This document shows, piece after piece, positions 44,791-64,000 of a stretch of DNA of 64,000 nucleotides (positions are counted from its first letter, which is position 1; every line of letters begins with the position of its first letter). This stretch comes from Dimorphilus gyrociliatus (taxonomy: Eukaryota > Animalia > Annelida), in contig CAJFCJ010000041.1 of NCBI GenBank assembly GCA_904063045.1, forward strand, positions 80,218 through 144,217, in the 5' to 3' direction. Below the pieces are notes generated by a model. It worked only from the letters and a program-made list of their open reading frames with translations, made no database searches and was not told where the DNA came from. The translations under genes and the position numbers were made by a program.

Positions 44791-44929
44791 GGAAAAAATA
44801 TTTTCCGAAAATATTTGAAGTCCAGCCTAACACAGTGTTAGAATTGAATCTAGGTCTTCTTCTGTTACATTTTATGAAAAGTGACTTACCTGATTGTTAT
44901 ACCTGCGATTTTTGAAAGGTTACCCTCTA

Positions 44930-45572
44930 ATTACTATAGAACGTAGGGTCGAGATACTGGCGATAGAGTCTAAGGCGGCTAGTCAGCCATCCTCACCTAC
45001 CACTGTTAACTTCAAAGCTCCATAGCTTCGCAACCGCTGGGCCGATTTCGTTCAAATTTTGCACAGTTGCTCAGTTCAATTAGATCTAGCACTGTGTAAA
45101 ATGTCATAACAATTGGAGCAAGTTGAAATTTCAACTTTCGTCAGTGGTCGACTTGCTTTACTGAGCACCAAGTAGGTGATTTGTAGTGAAAAAAGTGTGG
45201 GATTGAACCAGTACCTACCCTAAGGTATAGTAAGCCTCTCAGAGATCAGTCTGGTGGCAATCTAACCAGCCACTTTTCCCCTCTCACTTGATAAAGGAGG
45301 AATACCTCCAAAATATTGTGAGTTTTAATCTGGTGACATTGTTTTAGTTGCTAAATACAGGTTCTCTTCACCCTTGTGGAGAATTTGTAAGTGGTTTTGT
45401 TGGAGATACAGTTACAGCTTAGGCTGGGGAATTGCTACTCAAGATAGCAACTCCTCAATAGCTACACCAACCCTTAGCCAAAGCTTGGTTATAAGTGTGT
45501 GTGCACTTTTGGGATTACCAGTCTGTACTGATTGTGCTAATCCCTAACCCCAAGGCCTAACCTAACCCTAAC
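44930..45572 (-). mobile_element. Repeat family C copy
   Basis: Reverse complement of 33951-34590; ends in CCTAACCTAACCCTAACCCT. Confidence 0.75.
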
Positions 45573-47037: not shown

Positions 47038-48168
47038 TCAAAATTGGAAATCTTTTCTGCCTTTTACCAAAGAAGTACACTTAAAATGTGCGATTTTCTC
47101 TTCTTTGAGATTAAATATTGCCATTCTTCCTTTAGAAATTTCAGTTTCATTAGGTTCATCAGGTCCAACATGTATTAGTCTGTTAAAGCTGCCTTTTTCA
47201 TTATTTCCTGCATTTCCATTTCTTTGTTGTTGAAATCTATTTTGAGAAAAAGGTTTAAATGTATGTTCATTTTGATTTGAGTTACTCTGATTGTTGTCAA
47301 ATCTCCTTTTGTACTGTTTGAATTCATTTTCACTTTCTTTTCTTGCATTATCAAAAAATATTTCTGCTCTTTTTGCCAATTTAATATACTGATTAACTGA
47401 GTTAATCTTTCCATCTTTTTCCACATGATTAACAATTTTTCCTTTAAGACCATTCCTGAATACAGTTAACAGTTGAAGTTCTCTAACTCTTTCAGTAACA
47501 CAAGCCATTTCAGTAGTATTGAATGGTAGGAATTTTTCCACAAGTTCTTTACTTCTTCTAACAAAACTTTGGACAGTTTCATCATTGAACTGTCTCAATC
47601 TATCAATTTCTTTTTTGTAAGCCATAGGATCTGGATTAAATTCTTCATCCAATGCATCCCAAATTTCATTTTCATTTGCCATGGAGGGTAAACTTTCAAT
47701 AACATCTCTGGCTCTTCCAGTAGTGTATTTTCTCAGCATTCGAACTCTTTTCTCTTCTGTATCCCAAAGGTTTAATTCACAAGCTGTTTGAAAGTTCCTC
47801 TTAAAGGCCCAAGTATCTTTGCTACCAGAATAGGGTCTCAGCAAAGTAGTATTAGGTTTCTCATTAGCATCAATTAGAAGACTTGCAATTGTCTTTTCCA
47901 AAGCATTATCTTGAATGCCATTATAACTGAATTCTGGTTGAGTAGGATCAGGATTAACCATACCTTCAGGAATTGTAGCTGCCCCAGTCATCAAATGGTA
48001 CTTTAAAAAGCTATTACCATCAACTTTGGCTCCACTACTTTTAATTCTCAACATTAATTCATTAATTTTTGAAAGATACTCATCTACTTCCTTGGCTCTG
48101 GCTTTGTCATTCTCATAAACCAAAATAACATTCATTGAAGTAGCATTGTGGGCTGTCGACTGCGCCAT
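47038..48168 (-). CDS. gag: Gypsy gag
   Basis: Open ORF after PBS with capsid-like WAFKRNFQTACELNLW..KRVRML..TGRARDVI segment; no zinc knuckle seen. Confidence 0.8.
   Translation of the reverse strand: MAQSTAHNATSMNVILVYENDKARAKEVDEYLSKINELMLRIKSSGAKVDGNSFLKYHLMTGAATIPEGMVNPDPTQPEFSYNGIQDNALEKTIASLLIDANEKPNTTLLRPYSGSKDTWAFKRNFQTACELNLWDTEEKRVRMLRKYTTGRARDVIESLPSMANENEIWDALDEEFNPDPMAYKKEIDRLRQFNDETVQSFVRRSKELVEKFLPFNTTEMACVTERVRELQLLTVFRNGLKGKIVNHVEKDGKINSVNQYIKLAKRAEIFFDNARKESENEFKQYKRRFDNNQSNSNQNEHTFKPFSQNRFQQQRNGNAGNNEKGSFNRLIHVGPDEPNETEISKGRMAIFNLKEEKIAHFKCTSLVKGRKDFQF
48157..48167 (-). promoter_or_regulatory. Primer-binding site TGGCGCAGTCG (tRNA-Ser-like)
   Basis: 4 nt downstream of LTR end; resembles the complement of a tRNA-Ser 3' end. 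Confidence 0.65.
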
Positions 48169-48171
48169 ATT

Positions 48172-49106
48172 TGTACTGTGTTGTATTGTAATTGTAGGAA
48201 TTTCTGGTTCGTCACAACTGTAATCGTCCTTTCCAATCATTTACCAACTTGCCAAAGTACTGGTCCAAATAGAACCTTTAAAGTTCGTCCACAAATAGTC
48301 TAACAAAGGCAATTTCAGTAGAAATTGATTAACAAAACACCAGTATTTCGTCCAAAGAATATGTATTGAGTAAAATGAGCTTCTAGTTCTAAACAAGCTA
48401 GTTTAAACAACTAGCTAAAGGTTAGAAAACTGAACTATCAACTGTTAATTTCGTAGGGTTTATATACTCTTTTAAGGGTTGATAGTTCACAAATTTCAAT
48501 GTTCACAAAAACAAAAGTAACATTTGAAGACAAAGAAAAGTTCTAAATATGGTCATGTTTTTATTGTTTTCCTCTTCGAAATAATAGTTGAATTTCGAAG
48601 GTTGGAGAGTTGCATAAGATGTAACAATTTTAGTAGGACAAGTCCAACAATGAAGAAAACATGTAGATTGTATATTTGACCGTTTTTATATTCTACCTTA
48701 ATAATGATATTCAATTGATTGAGTTAGTAAATTTAGCATCAGCATATAAGGAGGAAGTATATCTGATTAATGCATGTTAAAAAGAACAGTATTGTGTATA
48801 CAATACTGTTGAACAGTGAATATAATCTAAACTTAGAATTGAAGCATAATTGATAATTAATTGAACTAGTTTTAGTTCGAAATCATAAATTTATGGATTA
48901 ATAAATTGTAATATTAATGCTAGGTTGCAAATAGCAAATATTCTTTATATAATTCAATAGGTTTTATTACTGCATAATGTGTATGCACTGCCCTATGCGA
49001 AACTAGGTCACTACTGCTTATCTTTATCAGTGCTATCTGCATAGTACAATACTGGTTCAATACTACTTCTCTATTGTAGAATATAGCTGACGAATGTATG
49101 TGGACA
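48172..49106 (-). repeat. Gypsy 5' LTR (family A, about 935 bp)
   Basis: Both ends defined by the solo copy at 23932-24517. Confidence 0.85.
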
Positions 49107-49261
49107 AACAACAATATAAGTAATATTGATAGGCTAAGCTTGACAATTTTCAATTTGTTTACTATGTATTGAATACAACTGGTTTTCTTCATAAATACTG
49201 TTAGTTTAAACGTAAAGAGTTGTCTATCAATTTTATTCTCATAATAAAATCATAGTTGAAA

Positions 49262-49971
49262 ATGTGGAAAGCCATTTTACTTGTTGCCATTTGCTTTAAT
49301 TTTGTTAGAGCTTATGAAGAGAATTCTCAGTTAAGCTCTCTTAGAAGTTTTGTTGAGAAGGTCAAAAAGGAAATTGAATTGAACAGTTTACAGCAATTGG
49401 TTAGAAAATCGGTAAAAAAATTCTAATAATTTTTTTGTAGAAAATTCATGATAACATTCAAACATTTCTTTAAAAGTTAATGAAGAGAGAAAACTATGAT
49501 AGTCAGCTTCCAATTTGGCTTGATGAAGAAAGAGAGTACTTTGATGGATATCTACCTGTTGAGCAAATTACTATCATTGGTAAAGATGGAGCCTTTGCAA
49601 CTAAACATTCTGGAGGACTAAATGTACCACTAACTGATCCTCAAAGAGAACTAATTGTTGAAAAGATGAAAGCAAATGATGTTGGATTCTTTATGGTAAT
49701 TTAAATAATTTTAAAAGGTTTAAAATGAAAATTTGCTCTAAAAGAACCAGGGGTATTTTTTTTAAAACAGGGAATTGTTCTTCACATTGAAGGAGGTCAC
49801 TTTCAGTATGTTGCAACTCATGACTCTGTAATTTTTTATTATGACCCCAGAAGGGGATACATGGCAATAGGAAAGTCTGGAAATGGGATTGTAATTGTAC
49901 GTGCCGATCTTACTAAGAATGCACAAAATATGTTTGTTTTTATCCAAAGGATTGGGAGACATATTCAATAA
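49262..49971 (+). CDS. Signal-peptide-containing profilin-like protein, 3 exons, about 185 aa
   Basis: join(49262..49399,49477..49695,49771..49971); MWKAILLVAICFNFVRA signal; ITIIGKDG, MGIVL..GG.FQYV, GYMAIGKSGNGIVIV and RIGRHI match the profilin pattern by eye. Confidence 0.6.
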
Positions 49972-50059
49972 TTATGAGTAAATAATCAGTTTAATGAATT
50001 TAAGACCGCGGATTGAAATGAACACATGCTTTTATTCTGTCAATAATATTTTCTGAATA

Positions 50060-50155
50060 GGTTAGGAACTGAACTATCAACTGTTAATTTCGTAGGGTTT
50101 ATATACTCTTTTAAGAGTTGATAGTTCACCAATTTCAATGTTCACAAAAACAAAA
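50060..50155 (-). mobile_element. LTR-A fragment
   Basis: Matches 48420-48515. Confidence 0.75.
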
Positions 50156-50273
50156 AAGCAGCTTTATCTTGAAAGTACCACCAATGTACAAAACAGTTGG
50201 ATTTTGATAATAAATTCAGCTGATGGTTTGTTGCAAAGATTAAAATTCTCTCTCTTTGTTTAACAACAAAAGA

Positions 50274-50306
50274 AGGGTTAGGGTTAGGGTTAGGGTTAGG
50301 TTAGGG
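50274..50306 (+). repeat. Telomeric repeat tract 1 (TTAGGG with one TTAGG)
   Basis: direct reading; G-rich strand on +. Confidence 0.9.
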
Positions 50307-50363
50307 TTTGGTAAGGGTTATGGGTTAGGCCACTCACACAACTCTGGTAATGTTTTTGGGAAC
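50297..50363 (-). mobile_element. 67-bp 5'-truncated copy of the Penelope-like element 3' end
   Basis: Identical to 50471-50537. Confidence 0.9.
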
Positions 50364-50480
50364 AGGGTTAGGTTAGGTTAGGGTTAGGTTAGGGTTAGGT
50401 TAGGGTTAGGGTTAGGGTTAGGGTTAGGTTAGGGTTAGGGTTAGGGTTAGGTTAGGGTTAGGGTTAGGGTTAGGTTAGGG
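50364..50480 (+). repeat. Telomeric repeat tract 2, mixed TTAGGG/TTAGG
   Basis: About 20 units, direct reading. Confidence 0.95.
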
Positions 50481-50812
50481 TTTGGTAAGGGTTATGGGTT
50501 AGGCCACTCACACAACTCTGGTAATGTTTTTGGGAACTGGTTAGCTAGTGTTCCAGTGTAATACCTAACTTTTACTCAATGTTAGGTAGGGGTTCTCCTT
50601 GGTCAGGATTATAGATCTGGGCTCCCAGTCTTAGTCAGGTTTTGGGAACTGGTTAGTTGGTGTTCCAGGGTTCTACCAATTTTCCAATAGGTAGGAGTTC
50701 TCTATGTCTGAGCTCCTTGGTGCTTCAGTGCTCTGTCAAACTCTTAGTCTTATTCAATAACAATTAAATTTTTTCTTTTTCATCAACTTTTTATTTTAAA
50801 CTTTAAAACATA

Positions 50813-50857
50813 TTACAACAATATTTCGCCTCTACTTGAGGCTTCATCAGGTTGTAA
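50813..50857 (-). ncRNA. Minimal type I hammerhead ribozyme
   Basis: TTACAAC-CTGATGA-A-GCCTC(AAGTA)GAGGC-GAAA-TATT-GTTGTAA. Confidence 0.85.
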
Positions 50858-50880
50858 GTTAAACTGAACACCAACATAAG

Positions 50881-50969
50881 TATTTATACCATCACCACAA
50901 AAAAAAAAAAAAATTTTATATATAAAAAACATGAAAACAAGATGGCTGCCCTTGCACTAGCGCCACCTA
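50881..50969 (-). promoter_or_regulatory. Putative PLE promoter: TATAAATA plus YY1-like and CTCF-like motifs (repeated in each unit)
   Basis: TATAAATA 50881-50888 (-), CAAGATGGCTGC 50938-50949 (+), TAGGTGGCGCTAGTG 50955-50969 (-). Confidence 0.45.
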
Positions 50970-50970
50970 A

Positions 50971-51162
50971 CTACATTTTTCTTTGTTTCTTTGAAGGTAC
51001 TACTTCAAATTCATCACCTGATCTTTTGATTAGGAGTCTTTGTTGTATTCCAATATTGCTATTCTCTTTTGGAGTGCTTTCATATTGATACTCACCATCT
51101 TCCATATCATCATAGTTGTCATCATCTTCTTCCTCCTCAGTCTGTTCCTTGGTAGGGACCAT
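50971..51162 (-). CDS. 63-aa acidic ORF in PLE 3' region (also 59174-59365 and 63277-63468)
   Basis: EEEEDDDNYDDMED run and C-terminal KKQRK; conservation may only reflect unit identity. Confidence 0.35.
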   Translation of the reverse strand: MVPTKEQTEEEEDDDNYDDMEDGEYQYESTPKENSNIGIQQRLLIKRSGDEFEVVPSKKQRKM

Positions 51163-51194
51163 TTCTTTGTCTGACTAAGTTGTAAGAACTGTTG

Positions 51195-51420
51195 AAGCTC
51201 ACTTGAGCTCTTGGAGCTCTATTGAGTTCATGAGCTCTACTGAGCTCTTGGAGCTCTTGGAGCTCTACTGAGTTCTTGGAGCTCTACTGAGCTCTTCAAG
51301 GTCTCCTGTGGTATTGGAGCTCAACTGAGCTACTGTAGCTCCTTGGAGCTCTTGGACCTTATTGTAGCTAACTGTAGCTTTTGGAGTTCCTTGTAGCTTG
51401 TAGAGCTTGTTGTAGCTGCT
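51195..51420. repeat. GAGCTC/AGCT-core 9-10-nt tandem repeats (in every unit)
   Basis: GAGCTCTTG / GAGCTCTACT units. Confidence 0.85.
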
Positions 51421-51428
51421 GAAATTCA

Positions 51429-53705
51429 TTACAGTTCTTGGAGTTCACTTTGGCTTTTCTGGAGTAGAATTTTTTCTATGTGTTTTTCCATCATCTCATC
51501 AACCTTCTTATTGATAAGCCAGTGTCTGGTAGTAGTTGGGATCCTAAAGGCAGTTATTGACTTATACATTTGGAAGTGAGAGCTGTTAGGGGCTAGCTGG
51601 TGGATTGTTCTCTTGACTTTCTCAGCTATTAGTTGGGCTCCATTGTGTTGTGGTATGAGGAGTGGTACCATTTCCTTGGTGGTAAAACCTTCATGTTTAT
51701 TAAGACCATGTGGGAACAGTGTATCCAAATGGTTGATGATTTCAGTTTCTTTTCTCATTAACCAAACTATTACTGAGCTCTCTGTGAGTTCCTTAGGAGC
51801 TACAGCAGCTATGTAGATCTTGAACTTCTTGATATCATGTGTTGCCATATGGTTATATAGTGGTCTATCTATCTTGTTTTTGAAGCCCAAATTATGGGTA
51901 CCCCATCTACACTTGATAGTATCTGTAGTCATACCCACATATGCTAACCCACACATAGAGCATTGTAGGATATAGACACAACCCTTGGTGTTACAGTTAA
52001 TGCTTTGGGTTAAGCTCCAAGAGTTGACCTGGTATAGGTCAAATACCTCATCTCTGGAGTCCAGTCTGAGGCAAGTATCACATCTAGTGTTACAACATTT
52101 ATTGACTTTATACCTCAGTGCCTTTTTTTCTTCAGCTCTGGTGTTGAATTTTTTAATGGTGTCCCTCCCCATTCTCCAGGTGTAGCCATTGACTTTATTG
52201 ATTCTAATGAGATCTTTGAACTGTGAGATAGCCATTTTGGGATCTTTGCAGTTTCTCATATATCTAGTTAGCTGGCTCATTAGGATACCTCTGAATGTGT
52301 GTGGTGGATGATTGGATTTGGTGTGTAGCAGTATTCTGGAGTCAGTAGCCTTAAAATGGGTTTCCCAGGAAAGAGAGTTCCCTAGTATATGTAGGTCCAA
52401 GTCCAGAAAAGTACTTGATTTAGGGTTCTGGGACCAAGTGAGCTTGATATCTGGATTTCTGTTGTTTAGTCTTGTCTGGAACTCCATGATGTCCCTGTCT
52501 GGTTTAGTGACCAAAATGATATCATCAATGTACCTGCCATAGTACTCAATGTCCTCTGTAAAATCTGTGACCAATTCGTGTTCCCAGGTGTGTAACACTA
52601 TGTTTGCATATGCTGGACTAAATGGAGCTCCCATAGCTGTGCCCTTTATTTGCAGGAACCTGTGGTTCCCAAAGGTGAAATCATTGTTGTTGAGACAAAT
52701 CCAAAGGAGTTCCAAGATTAGTTCATCAGGTCTACCTTCATGGTAGTGGGTTAACATGAACTCTTTAACAGCTTTTATGCCCCATTGAGGGTTAATGCTT
52801 GGGTATAGAGCTTCTACATCTGCTGTGAAGATCCCTCTGTTTTGCCAATTATGTATCATAGATAGTTTGCCAATGCAATGTTGGGTGTTTTTAACATAGC
52901 TAGTGGTACTTTTTGCCATTTTGACCAGATAGTGATCAACAAATTTAGATATTTTATATAGATCAGAGCCTACATAGCTCACCACTGGTCTCCCCTTGGG
53001 GATCCTATATGGTACTCTCCATTGGGAGCTGTGTTTATGAATTTTAGGTAGGAGGTAAAACTTTCTATCTCCTGGGCTATTCTGTGGAGCCATCAGAGTT
53101 GCTGTAGATTTGGTAATAATTTTCATTGTAACCAATTCATTAAGGATTTCATTTAACCGGGTCCATTGGGTAGAGCTTATTTTATTGCTGACCTGTTTGT
53201 AGGTTGTTCTGTCACAGAGCTGTGTCATGGCTTCAAAGACATAGTCCTCTTTGTCCATTAAGACAATCCTTCTTCCTTTATCAGCTGGTTTAATGATAAT
53301 GTTAGGATGATTGTTGAGGAAGTTTTTCATTAGGCCTTGATTTTCAAAACCCTTCTGGGCTCTATTAATTTTTTCAGAGCCCTTTATAATGTCATATATC
53401 CTGTCTGTGATATGGTTAATTTCTGGAATATGACTAGAGGGCATGTAATTTAACTCCCTCATTAGTTCAGGTAGAGATGGTGCTTGTATGTCAAGAAGTT
53501 TTTTCTTTAGTGGATTATTTCGAAATCTTGGTGTACCATTTTTCTCAATGATCTTTAGCCATTTTAATGTATAATCCAAGATCCCTGTGAAGTGCAAGTT
53601 TATAAATTTATTTGGGGCCCAAGTCCAGGCAAAGCCTAGACCTTGTGCCATAGTGTTCAGGCAAGAACTCTTGATGTTAGAGTTCCTACATAGGTTAAAA
53701 ACCAT
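51429..53705 (-). CDS. PLE reverse transcriptase + GIY-YIG endonuclease (Neptune-like), 758 aa
   Basis: FYLLPKIHK, GRPVVS, ADVEALYPSI, GTAMGAPFSP, RYIDDI; Cys linker CCNTRCDTC; VYILQCSMCGLAYVGMT. Confidence 0.95.
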   Translation of the reverse strand: MVFNLCRNSNIKSSCLNTMAQGLGFAWTWAPNKFINLHFTGILDYTLKWLKIIEKNGTPRFRNNPLKKKLLDIQAPSLPELMRELNYMPSSHIPEINHITDRIYDIIKGSEKINRAQKGFENQGLMKNFLNNHPNIIIKPADKGRRIVLMDKEDYVFEAMTQLCDRTTYKQVSNKISSTQWTRLNEILNELVTMKIITKSTATLMAPQNSPGDRKFYLLPKIHKHSSQWRVPYRIPKGRPVVSYVGSDLYKISKFVDHYLVKMAKSTTSYVKNTQHCIGKLSMIHNWQNRGIFTADVEALYPSINPQWGIKAVKEFMLTHYHEGRPDELILELLWICLNNNDFTFGNHRFLQIKGTAMGAPFSPAYANIVLHTWEHELVTDFTEDIEYYGRYIDDIILVTKPDRDIMEFQTRLNNRNPDIKLTWSQNPKSSTFLDLDLHILGNSLSWETHFKATDSRILLHTKSNHPPHTFRGILMSQLTRYMRNCKDPKMAISQFKDLIRINKVNGYTWRMGRDTIKKFNTRAEEKKALRYKVNKCCNTRCDTCLRLDSRDEVFDLYQVNSWSLTQSINCNTKGCVYILQCSMCGLAYVGMTTDTIKCRWGTHNLGFKNKIDRPLYNHMATHDIKKFKIYIAAVAPKELTESSVIVWLMRKETEIINHLDTLFPHGLNKHEGFTTKEMVPLLIPQHNGAQLIAEKVKRTIHQLAPNSSHFQMYKSITAFRIPTTTRHWLINKKVDEMMEKHIEKILLQKSQSELQEL

Positions 53706-53776
53706 ACTTGGTTCTGTTTTATTGATAAAAACATGTTTAAAAACATTATAATTGTTATGCTGTTGTGCTTGAAGAG

Positions 53777-54558
53777 TTAGGAGTTTCCCTGGTCCATAGT
53801 CTCCTCATCAGCACTCATTTTCTCTGTAATTCCTTTAAATAAGACAGTCATGATTGCCAATTCCTTTCTTAGTTCTGAGATTTCATCCTTAGAGTTCTTG
53901 TAAGGTTCTTTGTGTCTGGTTTTGTCTGCTGGTTTCTTGGATCTCTGTATGGTAGGGAGCTCTTTGAAATTTTCATGGAGCTCTCTATTGAAAGAGTCAT
54001 CTAAGGGAGCTTTTAGATTTTTGGTAACCAAGTATACACTTTCTTTAAGTTGGGCCCAATTAATCTTTTTGCCATATTTTTGTATCGATCTGGTTTTGGC
54101 TACTTCAATAGCTTTCTTAACCTCTGATTGATTGTAATTTTGCTGATCATTTTTTATCTTGTCCCTCATTTTAGAGAGCCTCTCATTGAGCTCCTCCAGC
54201 ACCACTCTATTTGTTTCTCTAGCACAAGTATTGGCTATTTCATGTAGTTGGTTGAGTCTTTCCCCAGTGATGGGACCTCCTGTGATTCTAATTGAGTCCA
54301 TCATATCCATGGCCTTTTTGGTCCAAGGGTTATATTCCTTAAGTCTCTCAATCTGGTGAATAGAACTGTAAGTTTTACTCATAGCTCTAGTCAGGGCTTT
54401 TTCCTTGTCACTTAGAGAACCTTTAAAACCATTTGCATCAGGTGCAGTCTGGCTCTTTGTGACTTGTACCCATCTGGGTTTGTCTGGAGCTCTGGAGTAG
54501 GGTGTCTTTCTTCCTGTTTTTTTGTTCTTCTAGGAGCTTGGTTTTGTTTAGGGTCCAT
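53777..54558 (-). CDS. PLE ORF1, unit 1 (one T missing in a run near 54520)
   Basis: Identical to unit 2 ORF1 apart from the indel. Confidence 0.7.
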
Positions 54559-54912
54559 TGCCAAAGTCTGTACTGGGTAGGTTAGGGTTGGTAAGGGTTA
54601 TGGGTTAGGCCACTCACACAACTCTGGTAATGTTTTTGGGAACTGGTTAGCTAGTGTTCCAGTGTAATACCTAACTTTTACTCAATGTTAGGTAGGGTTC
54701 TCCTTGGTCAGGATTATAGATCTGGCTCCCAGTCTTAGTCAGGTTTTGGAACTGTTAGTTGGTGTTCAGGGTTCTACCAATTTTCCAATAGGTAGGAGTT
54801 CTCTATGTCTGAGCTCCTTGGTGCTTCAGTGCTCTGTCAAACTCTTAGTCTTATTCAATAACAATTAAATTTTTTCTTTTTCATCAACTTTTTATTTTAA
54901 ACTTTAAACATA

Positions 54913-54955
54913 TTACACAATATTTCGCCTCTACTTGAGGCTTCATCAGTTGTAA
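54913..54955 (-). ncRNA. Hammerhead ribozyme, unit 2 (two 1-bp deletions)
   Basis: Same motif with deletions in stem I. Confidence 0.65.
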
Positions 54956-55522
54956 GTTAAACTGAACACCAACATAAGTATTTATACCATCACCACAAAA
55001 AAAAAAAAAATTTTATATATAAAAAACATGAAAACAAGATGGCTGCCCTTGCACTAGCGCCACCTAACTACATTTTTCTTTGTTTCTTTGAAGGTACTAC
55101 TTCAAATTCATCACCTGATCTTTGATTAGGAGTCTTTGTTGTATTCCAATATTGCTATTCTCTTTGGAGTGCTTTCATATTGATACTCACCATCTTCCAT
55201 ATCATCATAGTTGTCATCATCTTCTTCCTCCTCAGTCTGTTCCTTGGTAGGGACCATTTCTTTGTCTGACTAAGTTGTAAGAACTGTTGAAGCTCACTTG
55301 AGCTCTTGGAGCTCTATTGAGTTCATGAGCTCTACTGAGCTCTTGGAGCTCTTGGAGCTCTACTGAGTTCTTGGAGCTCTACTGAGCCTTCAAGGTCTCC
55401 TGTGGTATTGGAGCTCAACTGAGCTACTGTAGCTCCTTGGAGCTCTTGGACCTTATTGTAGCTAACTGTAGCTTTTGGAGTTCCTTGTAGCTTGTAGAGC
55501 TTGTTGTAGCTGCTGAAATTCA

Positions 55523-57799
55523 TTACAGTTCTTGGAGTTCCACTTTGGCTTTTCTGGAGTAGAATTTTTTCTATGTGTTTTTCCATCATCTCATCAACCT
55601 TCTTATTGATAAGCCAGTGTCTGGTAGTAGTTGGGATCCTAAAGGCAGTTATTGACTTATACATTTGAAGTGAGAGCTGTTAGGGGCTAGCTGGTGGATT
55701 GTCTCTTGACTTTCTCAGCTATTAGTTGGGCTCCATTGTGTTGTGGTATGAGGAGTGGTACCATTTCCTTGGTGGTAAAACCTTCATGTTTATTAAGACC
55801 ATGTGGGAACAGTGTATCCAAATGGTTTGATGATTTCAGTTTCTTTTCTCATTAACCAAACTATTACTGAGCTCTCTGTGAGTTCCTTAGGAGCTACAGC
55901 AGCTATGTAGATCTTGAACTTCTTGATATCATGTGTTGCCATATGGTTATATAGTGGTCTATCTATCTTGTTTTTGAAGCCCAAATTATGGGTACCCCAT
56001 CTACACTTGATAGTATCTGTAGTCATACCCACATATGCTAACCCACACATAGAGCATTGTAGGATATAACACAACCCTTGGTGTTACAGTTAATGCTTTG
56101 GGTTAAGCTCCAAGAGTTGACCTGGTATAGGTCAAATACCTCATCTCTGGAGTCCAGTCTGAGGCAAGTATCACATCTAGTGTTACAACATTTATTGACT
56201 TTATACCTCAGTGCCTTTTTTTCTTCAGCTCTGGTGTTGAATTTTTTAATGGTGTCCCCTCCCCATTCTCCAGGTGTAGCCATTGACTTTATTGATTCTA
56301 ATGAGATCTTTGAACTGTGAGATAGCCATTTTGGGATCTTTGCAGTTTCTCATATATCTAGTTAGCTGGCTCATTAGGATACCTCTGAATGTGTGTGGTG
56401 GATGATTGGATTTGGTGTGTAGCAGTATTCTGGAGTCAGTAGCCTTAAAATGGGTTTCCCAGGAAAGAGAGTTCCCTAGTATATGTAGGTCCAAGTCCAG
56501 AAAAGTACTTGATTTAGGGTTCTGGGACCAAGTGAGCTTGATATCTGGATTTCTGTTGTTTAGTCTTGTCTGGAACTCCATGATGTCCCTGTCTGGTTTA
56601 GTGACCAAAATGATATCATCAATGTACCTGCCATAGTACTCAATGTCCTCTGTAAAATCTGTGACCAATTCGTGTTCCCAGGTGTGTAACACTATGTTTG
56701 CATATGCTGGACTAAATGGAGCTCCCATAGCTGTGCCCTTTATTTGCAGGAACCTGTGGTTCCCAAAGGTGAAATCATTGTTGTTGAGACAAATCCAAAG
56801 GAGTTCCAAGATTAGTTCATCAGGTCTACCTTCATGGTAGTGGGTTAACATGAACTCTTTAACAGCTTTTATGCCCCATTGAGGGTTAATGCTTGGGTAT
56901 AGAGCTTCTACATCTGCTGTGAAGATCCCTCTGTTTTGCCAATTATGTATCATAGATAGTTTGCCAATGCAATGTTGGGTGTTTTTAACATAGCTAGTGG
57001 TACTTTTTGCCATTTTGACCAGATAGTGATCAACAAATTTAGATATTTTATATAGATCAGAGCCTACATAGCTCACCACTGGTCTCCCCTTGGGGATCCT
57101 ATATGGTACTCTCCATTGGGAGCTGTGTTTATGAATTTTAGGTAGGAGGTAAAACTTTCTATCTCCTGGGCTATTCTGTGGAGCCATCAGAGTTGCTGTA
57201 GATTTGGTAATAATTTTCATTGTAACCAATTCATTAAGGATTTCATTTAACCGGGTCCATTGGGTAGAGCTTATTTTATTGCTGACCTGTTTGTAGGTTG
57301 TTCTGTCACAGAGCTGTGTCATGGCTTCAAAGACATAGTCCTCTTTGTCCATTAAGACAATCCTTCTTCCTTTATCAGCTGGTTTAATGATAATGTTAGG
57401 ATGATTGTTGAGGAAGTTTTTCATTAGGCCTTGATTTTCAAAACCCTTCTGGGCTCTATTAATTTTTTCAGAGCCCTTTATAATGTCATATATCCTGTCT
57501 GTGATATGGTTAATTTCTGGAATATGACTAGAGGGCATGTAATTTAACTCCCTCATTAGTTCAGGTAGAGATGGTGCTTGTATGTCAAGAAGTTTTTTCT
57601 TTAGTGGATTATTTCGAAATCTTGGTGTACCATTTTTCTCAATGATCTTTAGCCATTTTAATGTATAATCCAAGATCCCTGTGAAGTGCAAGTTTATAAA
57701 TTTATTTGGGGCCCAAGTCCAGGCAAAGCCTAGACCTTGTGCCATAGTGTTCAGGCAAGAACTCTTGATGTTAGAGTTCCTACATAGGTTAAAAACCAT
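55523..57799 (-). pseudogene. PLE RT-EN, frameshifted copy
   Basis: Split into ORFs 56246-57799, 56038-56283, 55793-56074 and 55332-55664 by 1-bp indels (possibly sequencing error). Confidence 0.85.
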
Positions 57800-57870
57800 A
57801 CTTGGTTCTGTTTTATTGATAAAAACATGTTTAAAAACATTATAATTGTTATGCTGTTGTGCTTGAAGAG

Positions 57871-58653
57871 TTAGGAGTTTCCCTGGTCCATAGTCTCCTC
57901 ATCAGCACTCATTTTCTCTGTAATTCCTTTAAATAAGACAGTCATGATTGCCAATTCCTTTCTTAGTTCTGAGATTTCATCCTTAGAGTTCTTGTAAGGT
58001 TCTTTGTGTCTGGTTTTGTCTGCTGGTTTCTTGGATCTCTGTATGGTAGGGAGCTCTTTGAAATTTTCATGGAGCTCTCTATTGAAAGAGTCATCTAAGG
58101 GAGCTTTTAGATTTTTGGTAACCAAGTATACACTTTCTTTAAGTTGGGCCCAATTAATCTTTTTGCCATATTTTTGTATCGATCTGGTTTTGGCTACTTC
58201 AATAGCTTTCTTAACCTCTGATTGATTGTAATTTTGCTGATCATTTTTTATCTTGTCCCTCATTTTAGAGAGCCTCTCATTGAGCTCCTCCAGCACCACT
58301 CTATTTGTTTCTCTAGCACAAGTATTGGCTATTTCATGTAGTTGGTTGAGTCTTTCCCCAGTGATGGGACCTCCTGTGATTCTAATTGAGTCCATCATAT
58401 CCATGGCCTTTTTGGTCCAAGGGTTATATTCCTTAAGTCTCTCAATCTGGTGAATAGAACTGTAAGTTTTACTCATAGCTCTAGTCAGGGCTTTTTCCTT
58501 GTCACTTAGAGAACCTTTAAAACCATTTGCATCAGGTGCAGTCTGGCTCTTTGTGACTTGTACCCATCTGGGTTTGTCTGGAGCTCTGGAGTAGGGTGTC
58601 TTTCTTCCTGTTTTTTTTGTTCTTCTAGGAGCTTGGTTTTGTTTAGGGTCCAT
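57871..58653 (-). CDS. PLE upstream ORF1, 260 aa from ATG, basic N-terminus and helical/coiled-coil core
   Basis: Open in unit 2; same ORF at 53777-54558 and 61980-62761, each with a single homopolymer indel. Confidence 0.8.
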   Translation of the reverse strand: MDPKQNQAPRRTKKTGRKTPYSRAPDKPRWVQVTKSQTAPDANGFKGSLSDKEKALTRAMSKTYSSIHQIERLKEYNPWTKKAMDMMDSIRITGGPITGERLNQLHEIANTCARETNRVVLEELNERLSKMRDKIKNDQQNYNQSEVKKAIEVAKTRSIQKYGKKINWAQLKESVYLVTKNLKAPLDDSFNRELHENFKELPTIQRSKKPADKTRHKEPYKNSKDEISELRKELAIMTVLFKGITEKMSADEETMDQGNS

Positions 58654-59014
58654 TGCCAAAGTCTGTACTGGGTAGGTTAGGGTTTGGTAAGGGTTATGGG
58701 TTAGGCCACTCACACAACTCTGGTAATGTTTTTGGGAACTGGTTAGCTAGTGTTCCAGTGTAATACCTAACTTTTACTCAATGTTAGGTAGGGGTTCTCC
58801 TTGGTCAGGATTATAGATCTGGGCTCCCAGTCTTAGTCAGGTTTTGGGAACTGGTTAGTTGGTGTTCAAGGGTTCTACCAATTTTCCAATAGGTAGGAGT
58901 TCTCTATGTCTGAGCTCCTTGGTGCTTCAGTGCTCTGTCAAACTCTTAGTCTTATTCAATAACAATTAAATTTTTTCTTTTTCATCAACTTTTTATTTTA
59001 AACTTTAAAACATA

Positions 59015-59059
59015 TTACAACAATATTTCGCCTCTACTTGAGGCTTCATCAGGTTGTAA
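59015..59059 (-). ncRNA. Hammerhead ribozyme, unit 3
   Basis: Identical motif. Confidence 0.85.
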
Positions 59060-59631
59060 GTTAAACTGAACACCAACATAAGTATTTATACCATCACCAC
59101 AAAAAAAAAAAAAAAAATTTTATATATAAAAACATGAAAACAAGATGGCTGCCCTTGCACTAGCGCCACCTAACTACATTTTTCTTTGTTTCTTTGAAGG
59201 TACTACTTCAAATTCATCACCTGATCTTTTGATTAGGAGTCTTTGTTGTATTCCAATATTGCTATTCTCTTTTGGAGTGCTTTCATATTGATACTCACCA
59301 TCTTCCATATCATCATAGTTGTCATCATCTTCTTCCTCCTCAGTCTGTTCCTTGGTAGGGACCATTTCTTTGTCTGACTAAGTTGTAAGAACTGTTGAAG
59401 CTCACTTGAGCTCTTGGAGCTCTATTGAGTTCATGAGCTCTACTGAGCTCTTGGAGCTCTTGGAGCTCTACTGAGTTCTTGGAGCTCTACTGAGCTCTTC
59501 AAGGTCTCCTGTGGTATTGGAGCTCAACTGAGCTACTGTAGCTCCTTGGAGCTCTTGGACCTTATTGTAGCTAACTGTAGCTTTTGGAGTTCCTTGTAGC
59601 TTGTAGAGCTTGTTGTAGCTGCTGAAATTCA

Positions 59632-61908
59632 TTACAGTTCTTGGAGTTCACTTTGGCTTTTCTGGAGTAGAATTTTTTCTATGTGTTTTTCCATCATCTC
59701 ATCAACCTTCTTATTGATAAGCCAGTGTCTGGTAGTAGTTGGGATCCTAAAGGCAGTTATTGACTTATACATTTGGAAGTGAGAGCTGTTAGGGGCTAGC
59801 TGGTGGATTGTTCTCTTGACTTTCTCAGCTATTAGTTGGGCTCCATTGTGTTGTGGTATGAGGAGTGGTACCATTTCCTTGGTGGTAAAACCTTCATGTT
59901 TATTAAGACCATGTGGGAACAGTGTATCCAAATGGTTGATGATTTCAGTTTCTTTTCTCATTAACCAAACTATTACTGAGCTCTCTGTGAGTTCCTTAGG
60001 AGCTACAGCAGCTATGTAGATCTTGAACTTCTTGATATCATGTGTTGCCATATGGTTATATAGTGGTCTATCTATCTTGTTTTTGAAGCCCAAATTATGG
60101 GTACCCCATCTACACTTGATAGTATCTGTAGTCATACCCACATATGCTAACCCACACATAGAGCATTGTAGGATATAGACACAACCCTTGGTGTTACAGT
60201 TAATGCTTTGGGTTAAGCTCCAAGAGTTGACCTGGTATAGGTCAAATACCTCATCTCTGGAGTCCAGTCTGAGGCAAGTATCACATCTAGTGTTACAACA
60301 TTTATTGACTTTATACCTCAGTGCCTTTTTTTCTTCAGCTCTGGTGTTGAATTTTTTAATGGTGTCCCTCCCCATTCTCCAGGTGTAGCCATTGACTTTA
60401 TTGATTCTAATGAGATCTTTGAACTGTGAGATAGCCATTTTGGGATCTTTGCAGTTTCTCATATATCTAGTTAGCTGGCTCATTAGGATACCTCTGAATG
60501 TGTGTGGTGGATGATTGGATTTGGTGTGTAGCAGTATTCTGGAGTCAGTAGCCTTAAAATGGGTTTCCCAGGAAAGAGAGTTCCCTAGTATATGTAGGTC
60601 CAAGTCCAGAAAAGTACTTGATTTAGGGTTCTGGGACCAAGTGAGCTTGATATCTGGATTTCTGTTGTTTAGTCTTGTCTTGAACTCCATGATGTCCCTG
60701 TCTGGTTTAGTGACCAAAATGATATCATCAATGTACCTGCCATAGTACTCAATGTCCTCTGTAAAATCTGTGACCAATTCGTGTTCCCAGGTGTGTAACA
60801 CTATGTTTGCATATGCCGGACTAAATGGAGCTCCCATAGCTGTGCCCTTTATTTGCAGGAACCTGTGGTTCCCAAAGGTGAAATCATTGTTGTTGAGACA
60901 AATCCAAAGGAGTTCCAAGATTAGTTCATCAGGTCTACCTTCATGGTAGTGGGTTAACATGAACTCTTTAACAGCTTTTATGCCCCATTGAGGGTTAATG
61001 CTTGGGTATAGAGCTTCTACATCTGCTGTGAAGATCCCTCTGTTTTGCCAATTATGTATCATAGATAGTTTGCCAATGCAATGTTGGGTGTTTTTAACAT
61101 AGCTGGTGGTACTTTTTGCCATTTTGACCAGATAGTGATCAACAAATTTAGATATTTTATATAGATCAGAGCCTACATAGCTCACCACTGGTCTCCCCTT
61201 GGGGATCCTATATGGTACTCTCCATTGGGAGCTGTGTTTATGAATTTTAGGTAGGAGGTAAAACTTTCTATCTCCTGGGCTATTCTGTGGAGCCATCAGA
61301 GTTGCTGTAGATTTGGTAATAATTTTCATTGTAACCAATTCATTAAGGATTTCATTTAACCGGGTCCATTGGGTAGAGCTTATTTTATTGCTGACCTGTT
61401 TGTAGGTTGTTCTGTCACAGAGCTGTGTCATGGCTTCAAAGACATAGTCCTCTTTGTCCATTAAGACAATCCTTCTTCCTTTATCAGCTGGTTTAATGAT
61501 AATGTTAGGATGATTGTTGAGGAAGTTTTTCATTAGGCCTTGATTTTCAAAACCCTTCTGGGCTCTATTAATTTTTTCAGAGCCCTTTATAATGTCATAT
61601 ATCCTGTCTGTGATATGGTTAATTTCTGGAATATGACTAGAGGGCATGTAATTTAACTCCCTCATTAGTTCAGGTAGAGATGGTGCTTGTATGTCAAGAA
61701 GTTTTTTCTTTAGTGGATTATTTCGAAATCTTGGTGTACCATTTTTCTCAATGATCTTTAGCCATTTTAATGTATAATCCAAGATCCCTGTGAAGTGCAA
61801 GTTTATAAATTTATTTGGGGCCCAAGTCCAGGCAAAGCCTAGACCTTGTGCCATAGTGTTCAGGCAAGAACTCTTGATGTTAGAGTTCCTACATAGGTTA
61901 AAAACCAT
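59632..61908 (-). CDS. PLE reverse transcriptase + GIY-YIG endonuclease, 758 aa
   Basis: As unit 1; one Q>K difference seen. Confidence 0.95.
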   Translation of the reverse strand: MVFNLCRNSNIKSSCLNTMAQGLGFAWTWAPNKFINLHFTGILDYTLKWLKIIEKNGTPRFRNNPLKKKLLDIQAPSLPELMRELNYMPSSHIPEINHITDRIYDIIKGSEKINRAQKGFENQGLMKNFLNNHPNIIIKPADKGRRIVLMDKEDYVFEAMTQLCDRTTYKQVSNKISSTQWTRLNEILNELVTMKIITKSTATLMAPQNSPGDRKFYLLPKIHKHSSQWRVPYRIPKGRPVVSYVGSDLYKISKFVDHYLVKMAKSTTSYVKNTQHCIGKLSMIHNWQNRGIFTADVEALYPSINPQWGIKAVKEFMLTHYHEGRPDELILELLWICLNNNDFTFGNHRFLQIKGTAMGAPFSPAYANIVLHTWEHELVTDFTEDIEYYGRYIDDIILVTKPDRDIMEFKTRLNNRNPDIKLTWSQNPKSSTFLDLDLHILGNSLSWETHFKATDSRILLHTKSNHPPHTFRGILMSQLTRYMRNCKDPKMAISQFKDLIRINKVNGYTWRMGRDTIKKFNTRAEEKKALRYKVNKCCNTRCDTCLRLDSRDEVFDLYQVNSWSLTQSINCNTKGCVYILQCSMCGLAYVGMTTDTIKCRWGTHNLGFKNKIDRPLYNHMATHDIKKFKIYIAAVAPKELTESSVIVWLMRKETEIINHLDTLFPHGLNKHEGFTTKEMVPLLIPQHNGAQLIAEKVKRTIHQLAPNSSHFQMYKSITAFRIPTTTRHWLINKKVDEMMEKHIEKILLQKSQSELQEL

Positions 61909-61979
61909 ACTTGGTTCTGTTTTATTGATAAAAACATGTTTAAAAACATTATAATTGTTATGCTGTTGTGCTTGAAGAG

Positions 61980-62761
61980 TTAGGAGTTTCCCTGGTCCAT
62001 AGTCTCCTCATCAGCACTCATTTTCTCTGTAATTCCTTTAAATAAGACAGTCATGATTGCCAATTCCTTTCTTAGTTCTGAGATTTCATCCTTAGAGTTC
62101 TTGTAAGGTTCTTTGTGTCTGGTTTTGTCTGCTGGTTTCTTGGATCTCTGTATGGTAGGGAGCTCTTTGAAATTTTCATGGAGCTCTCTATTGAAAGAGT
62201 CATCTAAGGGAGCTTTTAGATTTTTGGTAACCAAGTATACACTTTCTTTAAGTTGGGCCCAATTAATCTTTTTGCCATATTTTTGTATCGATCTGGTTTT
62301 AGCTACTTCAATAGCTTTCTTAACCTCTGATTGATTGTAATTTTGCTGATCATTTTTTATCTTGTCCCTCATTTTAGAGAGCCTCTCATTGAGCTCCTCC
62401 AGCACCACTCTATTTGTTTCTCTAGCACAAGTATTGGCTATTTCATGTAGTTGGTTGAGTCTTTCCCCAGTAATGGGACCTCCTGTGATTCTAATTGAGT
62501 CCATCATATCCATGGCCTTTTTGGTCCAAGGTTATATTCCTTAAGTCTCTCAATCTGGTGAATAGAACTGTAAGTTTTACTCATAGCTCTAGTCAGGGCT
62601 TTTTCCTTGTCACTTAGAGAACCTTTAAAACCATTTGCATCAGGTGCAGTCTGGCTCTTTGTGACTTGTACCCATCTGGGTTTGTCTGGAGCTCTGGAGT
62701 AGGGTGTCTTTCTTCCTGTTTTTTTTGTTCTTCTAGGAGCTTGGTTTTGTTTAGGGTCCAT
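61980..62761 (-). CDS. PLE ORF1, unit 3 (one G missing near 62530)
   Basis: Identical apart from the indel and synonymous changes. Confidence 0.7.
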
Positions 62762-62780
62762 TGCCAAAGTCTGTACTGGG

Positions 62781-64000
62781 TAGGTTAGGGTTTGGTAAGG
62801 GTTATGGGTTAGGCCACTCACACAACTCTGGTAATGTTTTTGGGAACTGGTTAGCTAGTGTTCCAGTGTAATACCTAACTTTTACTCAATGTTAGGTAGG
62901 GGTTCTCCTTGGTCAGGATTATAGATCTGGGCTCCCAGTCTTAGTCAGGTTTTGGGAACTGGTTAGTTGGTGTTCCAGGGTTCTACCAATTTTCCAATAG
63001 GTAGGAGTTCTCTATGTCTGAGCTCCTTGGTGCTTCAGTGCTCTGTCAAACTCTTAGTCTTATTCAATAACAATTAAATTTTTTCTTTTTCATCAACTTT
63101 TTATTTTAAACTTTAAAACATATTACAACAATATTTCGCCTCTACTTGAGGCTTCATCAGGTTGTAAGTTAAACTGAACACAAACATAAGTATTTATACC
63201 ATCACCACAAAAAAAAAAAAAATTTATATATAAAACATGAAAACAAGATGGCTGCCCTTGCACTAGCGCCACCTAACTACATTTTTCTTTGTTTCTTTGA
63301 AGGTACTACTTCAAATTCATCACCTGATCTTTTGATTAGGAGTCTTTGTTGTATTCCAATATTGCTATTCTCTTTTGGAGTGCTTTCATATTGATACTCA
63401 CCATCTTCCATATCATCATAGTTGTCATCATCTTCTTCCTCCTCAGTCTGTTCCTTGGTAGGGACCATTTCTTTGTCTGACTAAGTTGTAAGAACTGTTG
63501 AAGCTCACTTGAGCTCTTGGAGCTCTATTGAGTTCTTGAGCTCTACTGAGCTCTTAGAGCTCTTGGAGCTCTACTGAGTTCTTGGAGCTCTACTGAGCTC
63601 TTCAAGGTCTCCTGTGGTATTGGAGCTCAACTGAGCTACTGTAGCTCCTTGGAGCTCTTGGACCTTATTGTAGCTAACTGTAGCTTTTGGAGTTCCTTGT
63701 AGCTTGTAGAGCTTGTTGTAGCTGCTGAAATTCATTACAGTTCTTGGAGTTCACTTTGGCTTTTCTGGAGTAGAATTTTTTCTATGTGTTTTTCCATCAT
63801 CTCATCAACCTTCTTATTGATAAGCCAGTGTCTGGTAGTAGTTGGGATCCTAAAGGCAGTTATTGACTTATACATTTGGAAGTGAGAGCTGTTAGGGGCT
63901 AGCTGGTGGATTGTTCTCTTGACTTTCTCAGCTATTAGTTGGGCTCCATTTGTTGTGGTATGAGGAGTGGTACCATTTCCTTGGTGGTAAAACCTTCATG
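62781..64000 (-). mobile_element. Penelope-like element, tandem unit 4 (runs off window)
   Basis: 3' region and end of RT-EN ORF. Confidence 0.95.
63123..63167 (-). ncRNA. Hammerhead ribozyme, unit 4
   Basis: Identical motif. Confidence 0.85.

What the first reader, a model, noticed from the sequence alone, without database searches (positions are those of the whole stretch)
50274..64000. Endonuclease-bearing Penelope-like element forming a polarised head-to-tail array on a telomeric tract
Seen: a G-rich (TTAGGG)n tract on + is joined directly to the 3' end of a 4.1-kb PLE, followed by at least three more units in the same orientation, with coding strands pointing back toward unique DNA. Known: this polarity and tandem build-up typify telomere-extending retroelements (Drosophila HeT-A/TART; the endonuclease-lacking PLEs Athena and Coprina), whereas GIY-YIG-containing Penelope/Neptune elements usually insert internally. 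Inference: a GIY-YIG-positive Neptune-like PLE has become a telomere-resident element that extends chromosome ends alongside telomerase, or nicks telomeric repeats site-specifically. I cannot confirm novelty without a search.
Basis: partly seen in the sequence, partly recalled or inferred. Interest (0 to 1): 0.9.

Follow-up and report, generated by a model that had tools for sequence, protein, structure and literature searches.

The report
Endonuclease-bearing Penelope element at chromosome ends
In the small annelid Dimorphilus gyrociliatus, a telomerase-related jumping gene that still carries its own DNA-cutting domain ends in a telomere-complementary tail and sits at chromosome tips between telomere repeats, a habit so far described only for relatives that lack the cutter.

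Summary
Window 50274-64000 is the last 13.7 kb of contig C41. It reads: flank, 31 nt of TTAGGG-type repeat, a 59-nt 3' stump of the element, 115 nt of repeat, then three full 4.1-kb units and one cut unit, all on the minus strand.

ORF2 encodes RT, a CX4CxxC linker and a GIY-YIG domain with all catalytic residues. A minimal hammerhead lies 340 nt before a degenerate CCCTAA-like tail.

Across the genome:
- All 40 exact 3' ends, on 21 contigs, run into CCCTAA repeats on the sense strand.
- All eight 5' truncations I could read are capped by telomere repeats.
- One cap is a 626-nt tract that begins contig C162.

The endonuclease is as constrained as the RT between two telomere-tailed families. 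A telomerase gene is present.

The array itself looks like an ordinary Penelope tandem: all 15 unit junctions are identical, which does not fit stepwise HeT-A-style additions. Whether the endonuclease is used at chromosome tips is unresolved.

This scan noted the same family before in at least 12 other pieces of this genome. I found no paper describing an endonuclease-bearing, telomere-tailed Penelope element. I rate it a new variant of a known kind.

The parts
50274..50304 (+). Proximal telomeric linker, about 31 nt of TTAGGG/TTAGG repeat. It joins the flanking repeat DNA to the first, stump copy of the element.
50305..50363 (-). 59-nt 5'-truncated copy holding only the last bases of the 3' UTR and the degenerate tail. 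Its 5' end is capped by the next telomeric tract.
   Evidence: (family D11)
50364..50478 (+). Second telomeric tract, about 115 nt, G strand on +. It lies between the stump and unit 1.
50479..54584 (-). Unit 1, full length, with both ORFs intact.
50479..50510 (-). Fixed degenerate telomere-like tail at the element's 3' end. On the sense strand it reads as CCTAA/CCCATAA/CCCTTA/CCAAA/CCCTAA-type units. It is identical in all 40 copies found.
50813..50857 (-). Minimal type-I hammerhead motif. It has a 7-bp helix I, the CUGAUGA core, a 5-bp helix II, GAAA and a tiny palindromic helix III. The predicted cut lies between 50820 and 50819. Exact copies are at 59015-59059 and 63123-63167.
   Evidence: Rfam does not call it
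51429..53705 (-). ORF2, 758 aa. RT covers about 52437-53039. The CX4CxxC linker and the GIY-YIG domain with CCHH cover about 51699-52040.
53777..54382 (-). ORF1, 201 aa, charged and helical-looking, with no Pfam match. It is in a different frame from ORF2.
54585..58680 (-). Unit 2. ORF2 is interrupted after residue 514 and there are several 1-nt indels, which may be long-read errors.
58681..62788 (-). Unit 3. ORF2 is intact (59632-61908). ORF1 is shortened at its start.
62789..64000 (-). Unit 4, only its 3' 1.2 kb, cut by the end of contig C41.

Best explanation
This is a young, probably active family of endonuclease-bearing Penelope-like retroelements of Dimorphilus gyrociliatus. It has a Neptune/Nematis-type linker and endonuclease, and it lives at chromosome ends.

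Shown:
- The element's RNA-sense strand ends in a fixed degenerate block of CCCTAA-like units followed by perfect CCCTAA repeats, the complement of the telomeric G strand.
- Every 3' end in the genome is joined through such repeats.
- 5'-truncated copies carry telomere repeats on their truncated ends.
- Elements point with their 5' ends toward the chromosome tip.

Inferred mechanism:
1. A longer-than-unit transcript from a tandem copy pairs through its CCCUAA block with a G-strand 3' end. That end may be a short or eroded telomere, a broken end, or a nick made by the element's own GIY-YIG domain.
2. The RT copies the RNA onto that end.
3. Telomerase, which the genome encodes, then extends the new cDNA end.

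The four units in this window were most likely laid down or amplified as a tandem, not added one by one. The endonuclease is kept by selection, so it serves some step. That step could be nicking duplex telomeric or subtelomeric DNA, or seeding internal master copies. Which step it serves is not known.
For: Anatomy. RT plus GIY-YIG lie in one ORF. The residues Y, Y, R, H, E and N, the CCHH motif and the CX4CxxC linker are invariant across eight relatives. The hammerhead folds as expected, z = -3.0.

3' ends across the genome. There are 40 exact 3' tails on 21 contigs. All are followed by at least 8 nt of CCCTAA-type repeat:
- 15 run into the next unit through one invariant junction;
- 2 run into a truncated copy after 3 repeats;
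- 3 run into tracts of 65-271 nt;
- 20 run into non-telomeric DNA after 8-42 nt.

5' ends. All eight 5' truncations that I could read are capped by 20-626 nt of repeat. They start at unit positions 23, 613, 3356, 3721, about 3733 (twice), 3780 and about 4050. One cap is the 626-nt tract that starts contig C162. A short proximal linker with a long distal tract is what addition to a chromosome end would leave.

Orientation. In 8 of 9 single-orientation contigs of known length, the 5' end faces the nearer contig end.

Share of telomere tracts. Five of the 11 contigs with 54-nt perfect tracts have the family directly beside the tract. A sixth, C5, has a copy 3.3 kb away.

Constraint. Between family A and the telomere-tailed family B, synonymous sites are saturated. 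Nonsynonymous divergence is 0.36 in both the RT and the linker+endonuclease.

Activity. Eight ORF2 copies are intact at 99.7-100% amino-acid identity. A likely RNA run holds low-depth ORF2 contigs and abundant 3'-module contigs.

Copy number. Word depth in a DNA run is roughly 22-25 times that of the flank, against about 22 assembled copies. This is a rough figure.

Telomerase. A Telomerase_RBD match lies at C10:286333-286790.
Against: - C41 ends inside the array, so no terminal repeats are seen at this locus.
- Short-read contigs do not bridge 50285-50481, so the flank-telomere-element joints rest on the long-read assembly alone.
- The invariant unit junction shows that arrays are not a record of independent additions.
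- One copy in C162 (21029-25204) and the copies in C35 have the opposite orientation. C107 and C254 hold inverted halves around runs of N.
- Other telomere-tailed families in this window lie in both orientations at internal sites. A CCCTAA tail alone therefore does not confine an element to chromosome tips.
- Thirteen of the 40 junctions were read only as 80-nt pattern matches.
Confidence: 0.6

Rival explanations
1. Pure end attachment of the Athena/Terminon kind. The element only ever primes on free chromosome ends, and the GIY-YIG domain plays no part in transposition.
For: The asymmetric joints fit end healing: an 8-42 nt proximal linker against a distal cap of up to 626 nt. So do the chains of co-oriented telomere-tailed modules in C162, C3, C70 and C85. 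Rotifer Terminons show the same architecture (PMC6431247).
Against: The linker+endonuclease is as constrained as the RT between two tailed families, and every catalytic residue is kept. A useless domain should decay. Endonuclease loss has happened repeatedly in other PLE lineages (PMC8557442).
Confidence: 0.15
2. Endonuclease-driven insertion aimed at duplex telomeric repeats, analogous to TRAS/SART of silkworm. The CX4CxxC linker steers the nuclease to (TTAGGG)n, as proposed for microsatellite targeting by Neptune elements.
For: The endonuclease and linker are intact and constrained. The linker has been proposed to mediate microsatellite bias in Neptune elements (PMC8557442). The C70 copy has telomere repeats on both sides, 272 and 130 nt.
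Against: Only 3 of 25 non-array 3' joints have a proximal tract longer than 42 nt. Twenty abut non-telomeric DNA after 8-42 nt. That is not expected if insertion is into existing long tracts. No fixed cut position can be read, because the tail itself is telomeric.
Confidence: 0.15
3. An ordinary endonuclease-bearing PLE that merely piles up in TE-rich subtelomeres. Its CCCTAA tail is a microsatellite-type 3' tail, and the telomere repeats next to it come from unrelated breakage, healing and recombination between chromosome ends.
For: The subterminal 20 kb of the window is TE-rich, with LTR gag-protease remnants and other tailed elements in both orientations. Identical unit junctions and near-identical copies could partly reflect DNA-level exchange between ends.
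Against: All eight readable 5' truncation points, each at a different position, are joined directly to telomere repeats with 1-3 nt of in-register overlap. About half of the long telomeric tracts in the assembly touch this one family. There are twenty different proximal flanks with variable linker lengths.
Confidence: 0.08
4. Assembly artefact. One copy has been expanded into an array, or telomeric reads have been joined to it chimerically.
For: The assembly is a draft long-read assembly. Unit 2 carries many 1-nt indels. The joints are not bridged by short-read contigs. C254 looks like two ends joined across a run of N.
Against: The same joints recur independently on 21 contigs. The depth ratio in a DNA run matches the assembled copy number. 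A likely RNA contig reproduces a tail, three repeats and a truncated copy as one joint (loose end at 50855).
Confidence: 0.02

Closest known systems
Athena / Terminon (bdelloid rotifers) and Coprina (fungi, protists): endonuclease-deficient telomere-attached PLEs
   Same: - Reverse-complement telomeric repeats at the 3' end.
- A hammerhead motif in the 3' region.
- 5'-truncated copies capped by telomeric repeats.
- Co-oriented head-to-tail chains at chromosome ends, with 5' ends facing the tip.
- Co-existence with telomerase.
   Different: Here the RT ORF carries a fused, intact and constrained C-terminal GIY-YIG domain with linker. Athena and Coprina RT ORFs lack it, and Terminons have at most a separate GIY-YIG-like ORF. 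The hammerhead lies about 340 nt upstream of the tail, not immediately beside it. The host is an annelid with TTAGGG repeats. Units are compact (4.1 or 5.3 kb).
Neptune / Nematis endonuclease-bearing PLEs
   Same: - One RT-endonuclease ORF.
- A CX2-5CxxC linker and CCHH inside the GIY-YIG domain.
- A minimal type-I hammerhead.
- Tandem or partial-tandem (pseudo-LTR) organisation.
- A reported bias for simple repeats.
   Different: The known members are described as dispersed within chromosomes. None that I found in the literature has a telomere-complementary tail or telomere-capped truncations. Clade membership by phylogeny was not tested here.
TRAS1 / SART1 (Bombyx) and HeT-A / TART (Drosophila)
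   Same: They are retroelements tied to telomeres with fixed polarity. TRAS and SART coexist with telomeric repeats.
   Different: Those are non-LTR elements with an APE-type endonuclease or none, and with poly(A) or other tails. TRAS and SART insert at a fixed position with telomere repeats on both sides. HeT-A and TART replace telomerase. Here the enzyme class, the tail and the joint pattern all differ.

Membership tests
Penelope-like element, endonuclease-bearing (Neptune/Nematis type) | PLE-type reverse transcriptase (DKG motif, YIDD active site) | tested here: met
   RVT_1 at E 9e-11. IIIKPADKG and RYIDD are invariant in alignment A1. The closest relatives carry the precomputed families DUF8422 and HTH_animal.
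Penelope-like element, endonuclease-bearing (Neptune/Nematis type) | C-terminal GIY-YIG endonuclease with an internal CCHH motif | tested here: met
   PF01541 at E 3e-6, residues 574-659. Y578, C582, C585, Y589, R600, H604, H619, E653 and N669 are invariant.
Penelope-like element, endonuclease-bearing (Neptune/Nematis type) | CX2-5CxxC zinc-finger-like linker between RT and endonuclease | tested here: met
   A C-x4-C-x2-C motif is present in this element, in family B and in P0001, P0004, P0007 and P0012. It is absent from the two fish hits. The motif definition is from PMC8557442.
Penelope-like element, endonuclease-bearing (Neptune/Nematis type) | Hammerhead motif in the repeated 3'/pseudo-LTR region, with tandem or partial-tandem copies | tested here: met
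   The core and helices were found by eye and by folding. Rfam models miss it.
Penelope-like element, endonuclease-bearing (Neptune/Nematis type) | RT groups with named Neptune or Nematis references in a phylogeny | not testable with these tools
   No named reference sequences could be obtained. The hits carry no clade names.
Athena / Coprina / Terminon (telomere-attached PLEs) | RT ORF lacks an endonuclease domain | tested here: not met
   GIY-YIG is fused to the RT, intact and constrained.
Athena / Coprina / Terminon (telomere-attached PLEs) | [quoted passage not shown] | tested here: met
   All 40 3' ends have it.
Athena / Coprina / Terminon (telomere-attached PLEs) | Hammerhead immediately upstream of the telomeric stretch | tested here: not met
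   The hammerhead lies about 340 nt upstream of the tail. There is no second core nearer to it.
Athena / Coprina / Terminon (telomere-attached PLEs) | 5'-truncated copies capped by telomeric repeats, in co-oriented chains at chromosome ends | tested here: met
   Eight capped truncations were read, one at the terminal tract of C162. Chains are seen in C162, C3, C70 and C85.
TRAS/SART-type telomere-repeat-specific elements | Insertion at one fixed position of the repeat, with telomeric repeats on both sides | tested here: inconclusive
   Both sides are telomeric in only a few copies (C70 and the window's unit 1). Twenty 3' joints reach non-telomeric DNA after 8-42 nt. The cut position cannot be read because the tail itself is telomeric.

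The most novel reading that the evidence does not exclude
This lineage works in two modes. It primes on free or eroded G-strand ends like the endonuclease-less Athena and Coprina elements, so it helps heal and lengthen chromosome ends alongside telomerase. It also uses its conserved GIY-YIG domain to open duplex telomeric or subtelomeric DNA. That would make it a living link between the tip-bound and the dispersed branches of the sister group of telomerase.
Probability: 0.3. Interest if true: 0.8.

Novelty: new variant of a known kind. Interest (0 to 1): 0.62.

Why it matters
Current reviews split Penelope-like elements in two. Those with an endonuclease spread inside chromosomes. Those without one are confined to chromosome ends, where they prime on telomeric overhangs (PMC8557442).

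A family that has the telomere-pairing tail, telomere-capped truncations and tip-facing polarity, while keeping a selected endonuclease, blurs that split. It gives a tractable case for two questions: how telomere attachment evolved in the sister group of telomerase, and what the endonuclease adds.

The host has a 78-Mb genome and can be cultured. The element is compact and young, so biochemical and population tests are realistic.

Tried and rejected
- **Rfam.** Gathering-free scans of 48000-64000 and of 50480-51000 gave no hammerhead. The motif was found by eye and supported by folding, so the blank reflects the models, not the RNA.
- **Hammerhead-cut RNA as template.** I tested whether short 3' modules start at the predicted cleavage site (unit position 3767/3768). 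They start at 3721, about 3733 and 3780, near the site but not at it. There is no support for hammerhead-cut RNA being the template.
- **Target-site duplications.** I looked around the two 520-bp derivative copies in C85 and C37 and found nothing convincing.
- **Fetching more genome.** I did not try again. I read the remaining 13 joints through pattern matches only. The lengths of nine of the 21 tail-bearing contigs, and of five other contigs with long telomeric tracts, stay unknown.
- **Short-read contigs.** They do not cross the telomeric tract, so they neither confirm nor refute the joints. After that call I sent no telomeric letters to any search tool.
- **Relatives outside this species.** The closest one (L025, 43% identity) starts with a degenerate CCCTAA-like stretch upstream of ORF1. 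L026 and L028 show none, and L027 shows only scattered AACCTAACC motifs. This is weak evidence that the tail is older than this species. No contig was on record for P0007.
- **Runs of N.** Runs of 51-4474 bases lie next to several copies and tracts. They could be gaps or withheld stretches, and I could not tell which.
- **Not attempted.** I did no structure prediction, complex prediction or RT tree, because none would separate the rival mechanisms.
Full report
**What is in the window**

The window is G000:C41:80218-144217, and C41 is 144217 bases long, so the finding occupies the last 13.7 kb of a contig. A hit named DgyrCDS14535 lies on a 304891-base contig, the length of C46. This identifies the genome as Dimorphilus gyrociliatus.

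Reading rightward on the + strand:
- a high-copy repeat ends at 50273;
- about 31 nt of TTAGGG/TTAGG repeat (50274-50304);
- a 59-nt piece that is the extreme 3' end of the element (50305-50363);
- about 115 nt of repeat (50364-50478);
- units at 50479-54584, 54585-58680 and 58681-62788;
- a partial unit at 62789-64000, cut by the contig end.

Units are 99.3-100% alike. All lie on the minus strand, so 3' ends face the unique side and 5' ends face the contig end. The G-rich strand runs 5' to 3' toward the contig end, as at a right-hand telomere.

**The element**

- ORF1 has 201 aa, is charged, and has no Pfam match.
- ORF2 has 758 aa. It matches RVT_1 and GIY-YIG.
- In an alignment with family B, the nearest foreign relative and five other hits, these are invariant: the DKG and YIDD motifs, the GIY-YIG residues Y578, Y589, R600, H604, E653 and N669, and the CCHH residues C582, C585, H604 and H619.
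- A C-x4-C-x2-C linker precedes the nuclease. It is the Neptune/Nematis-type linker of PMC8557442.
- ORF2 is intact in units 1 and 3 and broken in unit 2. Eight intact copies at 99.7-100% amino-acid identity were seen in the fetched DNA.
- On the sense strand, about 340 nt before the 3' end, there is a type-I hammerhead core. It has a 7-bp helix I, a 5-bp helix II and a minimal palindromic helix III. This is the metazoan PLE form of PMC4209133. Rfam does not call it.
- The 3' end is a fixed block of five degenerate CCCTAA-like units, followed by perfect repeats.

A 40-nt probe for the tail finds 40 exact or near-exact 3' ends on 21 contigs. I read what follows each one:
- 15 continue into the next unit through one invariant junction;
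- 2 continue into a 5'-truncated copy after three repeats;
- 3 continue into 65-271 nt of repeat;
- 20 reach non-telomeric DNA after 8-42 nt of repeat.

None lacks the repeat.

All eight 5' truncations I could read are joined directly to CCCTAA repeats on the sense strand, with 1-3 nt of in-register overlap. Their unit positions are 23, 613, 3356, 3721, about 3733 (twice), 3780 and about 4050. The caps measure 20 to 626 nt. The 626-nt cap is the tract that begins contig C162, and the element there points its 5' end at it.

Of 11 contigs with 54-nt perfect tracts, five have the family directly beside the tract, and a sixth (C5) has a copy 3.3 kb away. In 8 of 9 single-orientation contigs of known length, the 5' end faces the nearer contig end. 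'Most copies dispersed internally without telomeric flanks' is therefore not what is seen.

**What the joints say about mechanism**

A simple insertion into a long telomere would leave long tracts on both sides. A simple internal insertion would leave unique DNA on both sides.

The common pattern here is a short proximal linker and a long distal tract, or a further co-oriented tailed module. That is the signature of addition to a short or broken chromosome end followed by telomerase extension, as described for Athena and Terminons (PMC6431247, PMC3846280). A Telomerase_RBD match shows the host has telomerase.

Against a stepwise reading of the array itself, the 15 unit-to-unit junctions are identical, untruncated and shared by the 4.1-kb and 5.3-kb variants. 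The tandem is therefore part of the template or was amplified as DNA. Tandems are normal for all PLEs, whose RT starts inside a longer-than-unit RNA (PMC11167929). Here the internal start site would be the CCCUAA block.

**Is the endonuclease a relic?**

A second telomere-tailed family (B, in C107) has a 759-aa ORF2 that is 51% identical. Synonymous sites between the two families are saturated. Nonsynonymous divergence is 0.36 in both the RT and the linker+endonuclease, and all catalytic residues are kept. The nuclease has therefore been under selection while both families carried telomeric tails, so it is used.

Where it is used is open. Other tailed families in this same window lie in both orientations at internal sites: a tail at 45556-45574 on +, a copy at 33954-34591 on -, and a tail at 16269-16281. 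A CCCTAA tail is thus compatible with nuclease-driven internal insertion. One family A copy in C162 and those in C35 also break the polarity.

**Independent data**

- A 2020 DNA run holds the element at a word depth about 22-25 times that of the flank. The assembly holds about 22 ORF2-bearing copies. This argues against over-expansion, although such depths are rough.
- A 2017 run is evidently RNA, because its contig over 49300-50022 skips two GT..AG introns. It has low-depth contigs on ORF2 and a deep contig over the hammerhead-to-tail module. That contig continues into three telomere repeats and another tail.
- No short-read contig crosses 50285-50481.

**Limits**

- C41 stops inside the array.
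- Several inverted arrangements sit next to runs of N of unknown nature.
- No named PLE references were available for a tree.

**Literature and earlier notes**

In the held library I found no report of an endonuclease-bearing PLE with a telomere-complementary tail. The standard statement is the opposite dichotomy (PMC8557442).

This scan has already noted the same family in at least 12 other pieces of this genome. Those are unchecked AI notes, and I count only what I tested here.

**Verdict**

The core interpretation, a telomere-resident endonuclease-bearing PLE, is well supported genome-wide. The array is not evidence of stepwise addition, and the role of the nuclease is unresolved. I rate it a new variant of a known kind.

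Noticed in passing
window 44311-45574 (+) and 33954-34591 (-); also C162:14736-16183 and C125:7708-7913: A different repeat of about 1.3 kb ('family C') ends in its own CCCTAACCCC-type tail plus 12-19 nt of telomeric repeat. It occurs in both orientations within the last 30 kb of the contig, so telomere-tailed elements are not all polarised.
   Followed up: partly
window 16269-16281 (+), 15953-15967 (-), 2903-2914 (-): Further short CCCTAA-type stretches sit at the ends of other repeats. One has a tail resembling that of family B. Several tailed families appear to share this genome.
   Followed up: no
C107:35588-45064 (L018/L019): Family B is a 4.7-kb tandem PLE with ORF1 (259 aa), ORF2 (759 aa, RT plus GIY-YIG, 51% identical to this element) and a small ORF3. 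Its own tail is followed by 14-24 nt of telomeric repeat.
   Followed up: partly
C162:30954-36211 and copies in C254 and C107: A 5.26-kb variant of the same family carries about 1.1 kb extra (a third ORF) between unit positions 3381 and 3413. The window's 4.1-kb units lack it. The nearest foreign relative (L025) also has three ORFs.
   Followed up: partly
C85:3753-4266 and C37:22556-23068: A 515-bp derivative (97.7% alike between the two loci, about 91% to the element) consists of a short distinct head plus the hammerhead-to-tail module. It looks like a non-autonomous companion.
   Followed up: partly
window 45871-48240 (-) and 41272-42594 (+): There are LTR-retrotransposon gag and aspartyl-protease remnants and an ORF with a FLYWCH zinc finger. 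The subterminal region is TE-rich.
   Followed up: partly
window 49300-50022: An expressed, spliced gene lies within 300 bp of the telomeric tract. Introns at 49411-49475 and 49695-49769 are seen in one contig of a 2017 run.
   Followed up: no
window 50067-50254: The DNA abutting the telomeric tract is a very high-copy repeat, with word depth about 100 times the unique flank. It also lies beside the inverted copy in C162.
   Followed up: no
G000:C23:755867-758684: G-strand telomeric tracts are followed within 1.2 kb by C-strand tracts, head to head. This is either two chromosome ends joined by scaffolding or a fusion point.
   Followed up: no
C254:9145-10420, C22:795604-798308: Long telomeric caps run straight into runs of N (666 and 2283 bases). 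I could not tell whether these are gaps or withheld stretches.
   Followed up: partly
run X6 laid on window 49300-55200: A 2024 run under the same species label matches this stretch only in short pieces at about 90-95% identity, even in the flank. It may be a divergent strain or a cryptic species.
   Followed up: no
C41:78896-80239 (overlaps window 1-22): A diverged PLE fragment, 74-75% identical to ORF2 DNA, sits at the left edge of the window.
   Followed up: no
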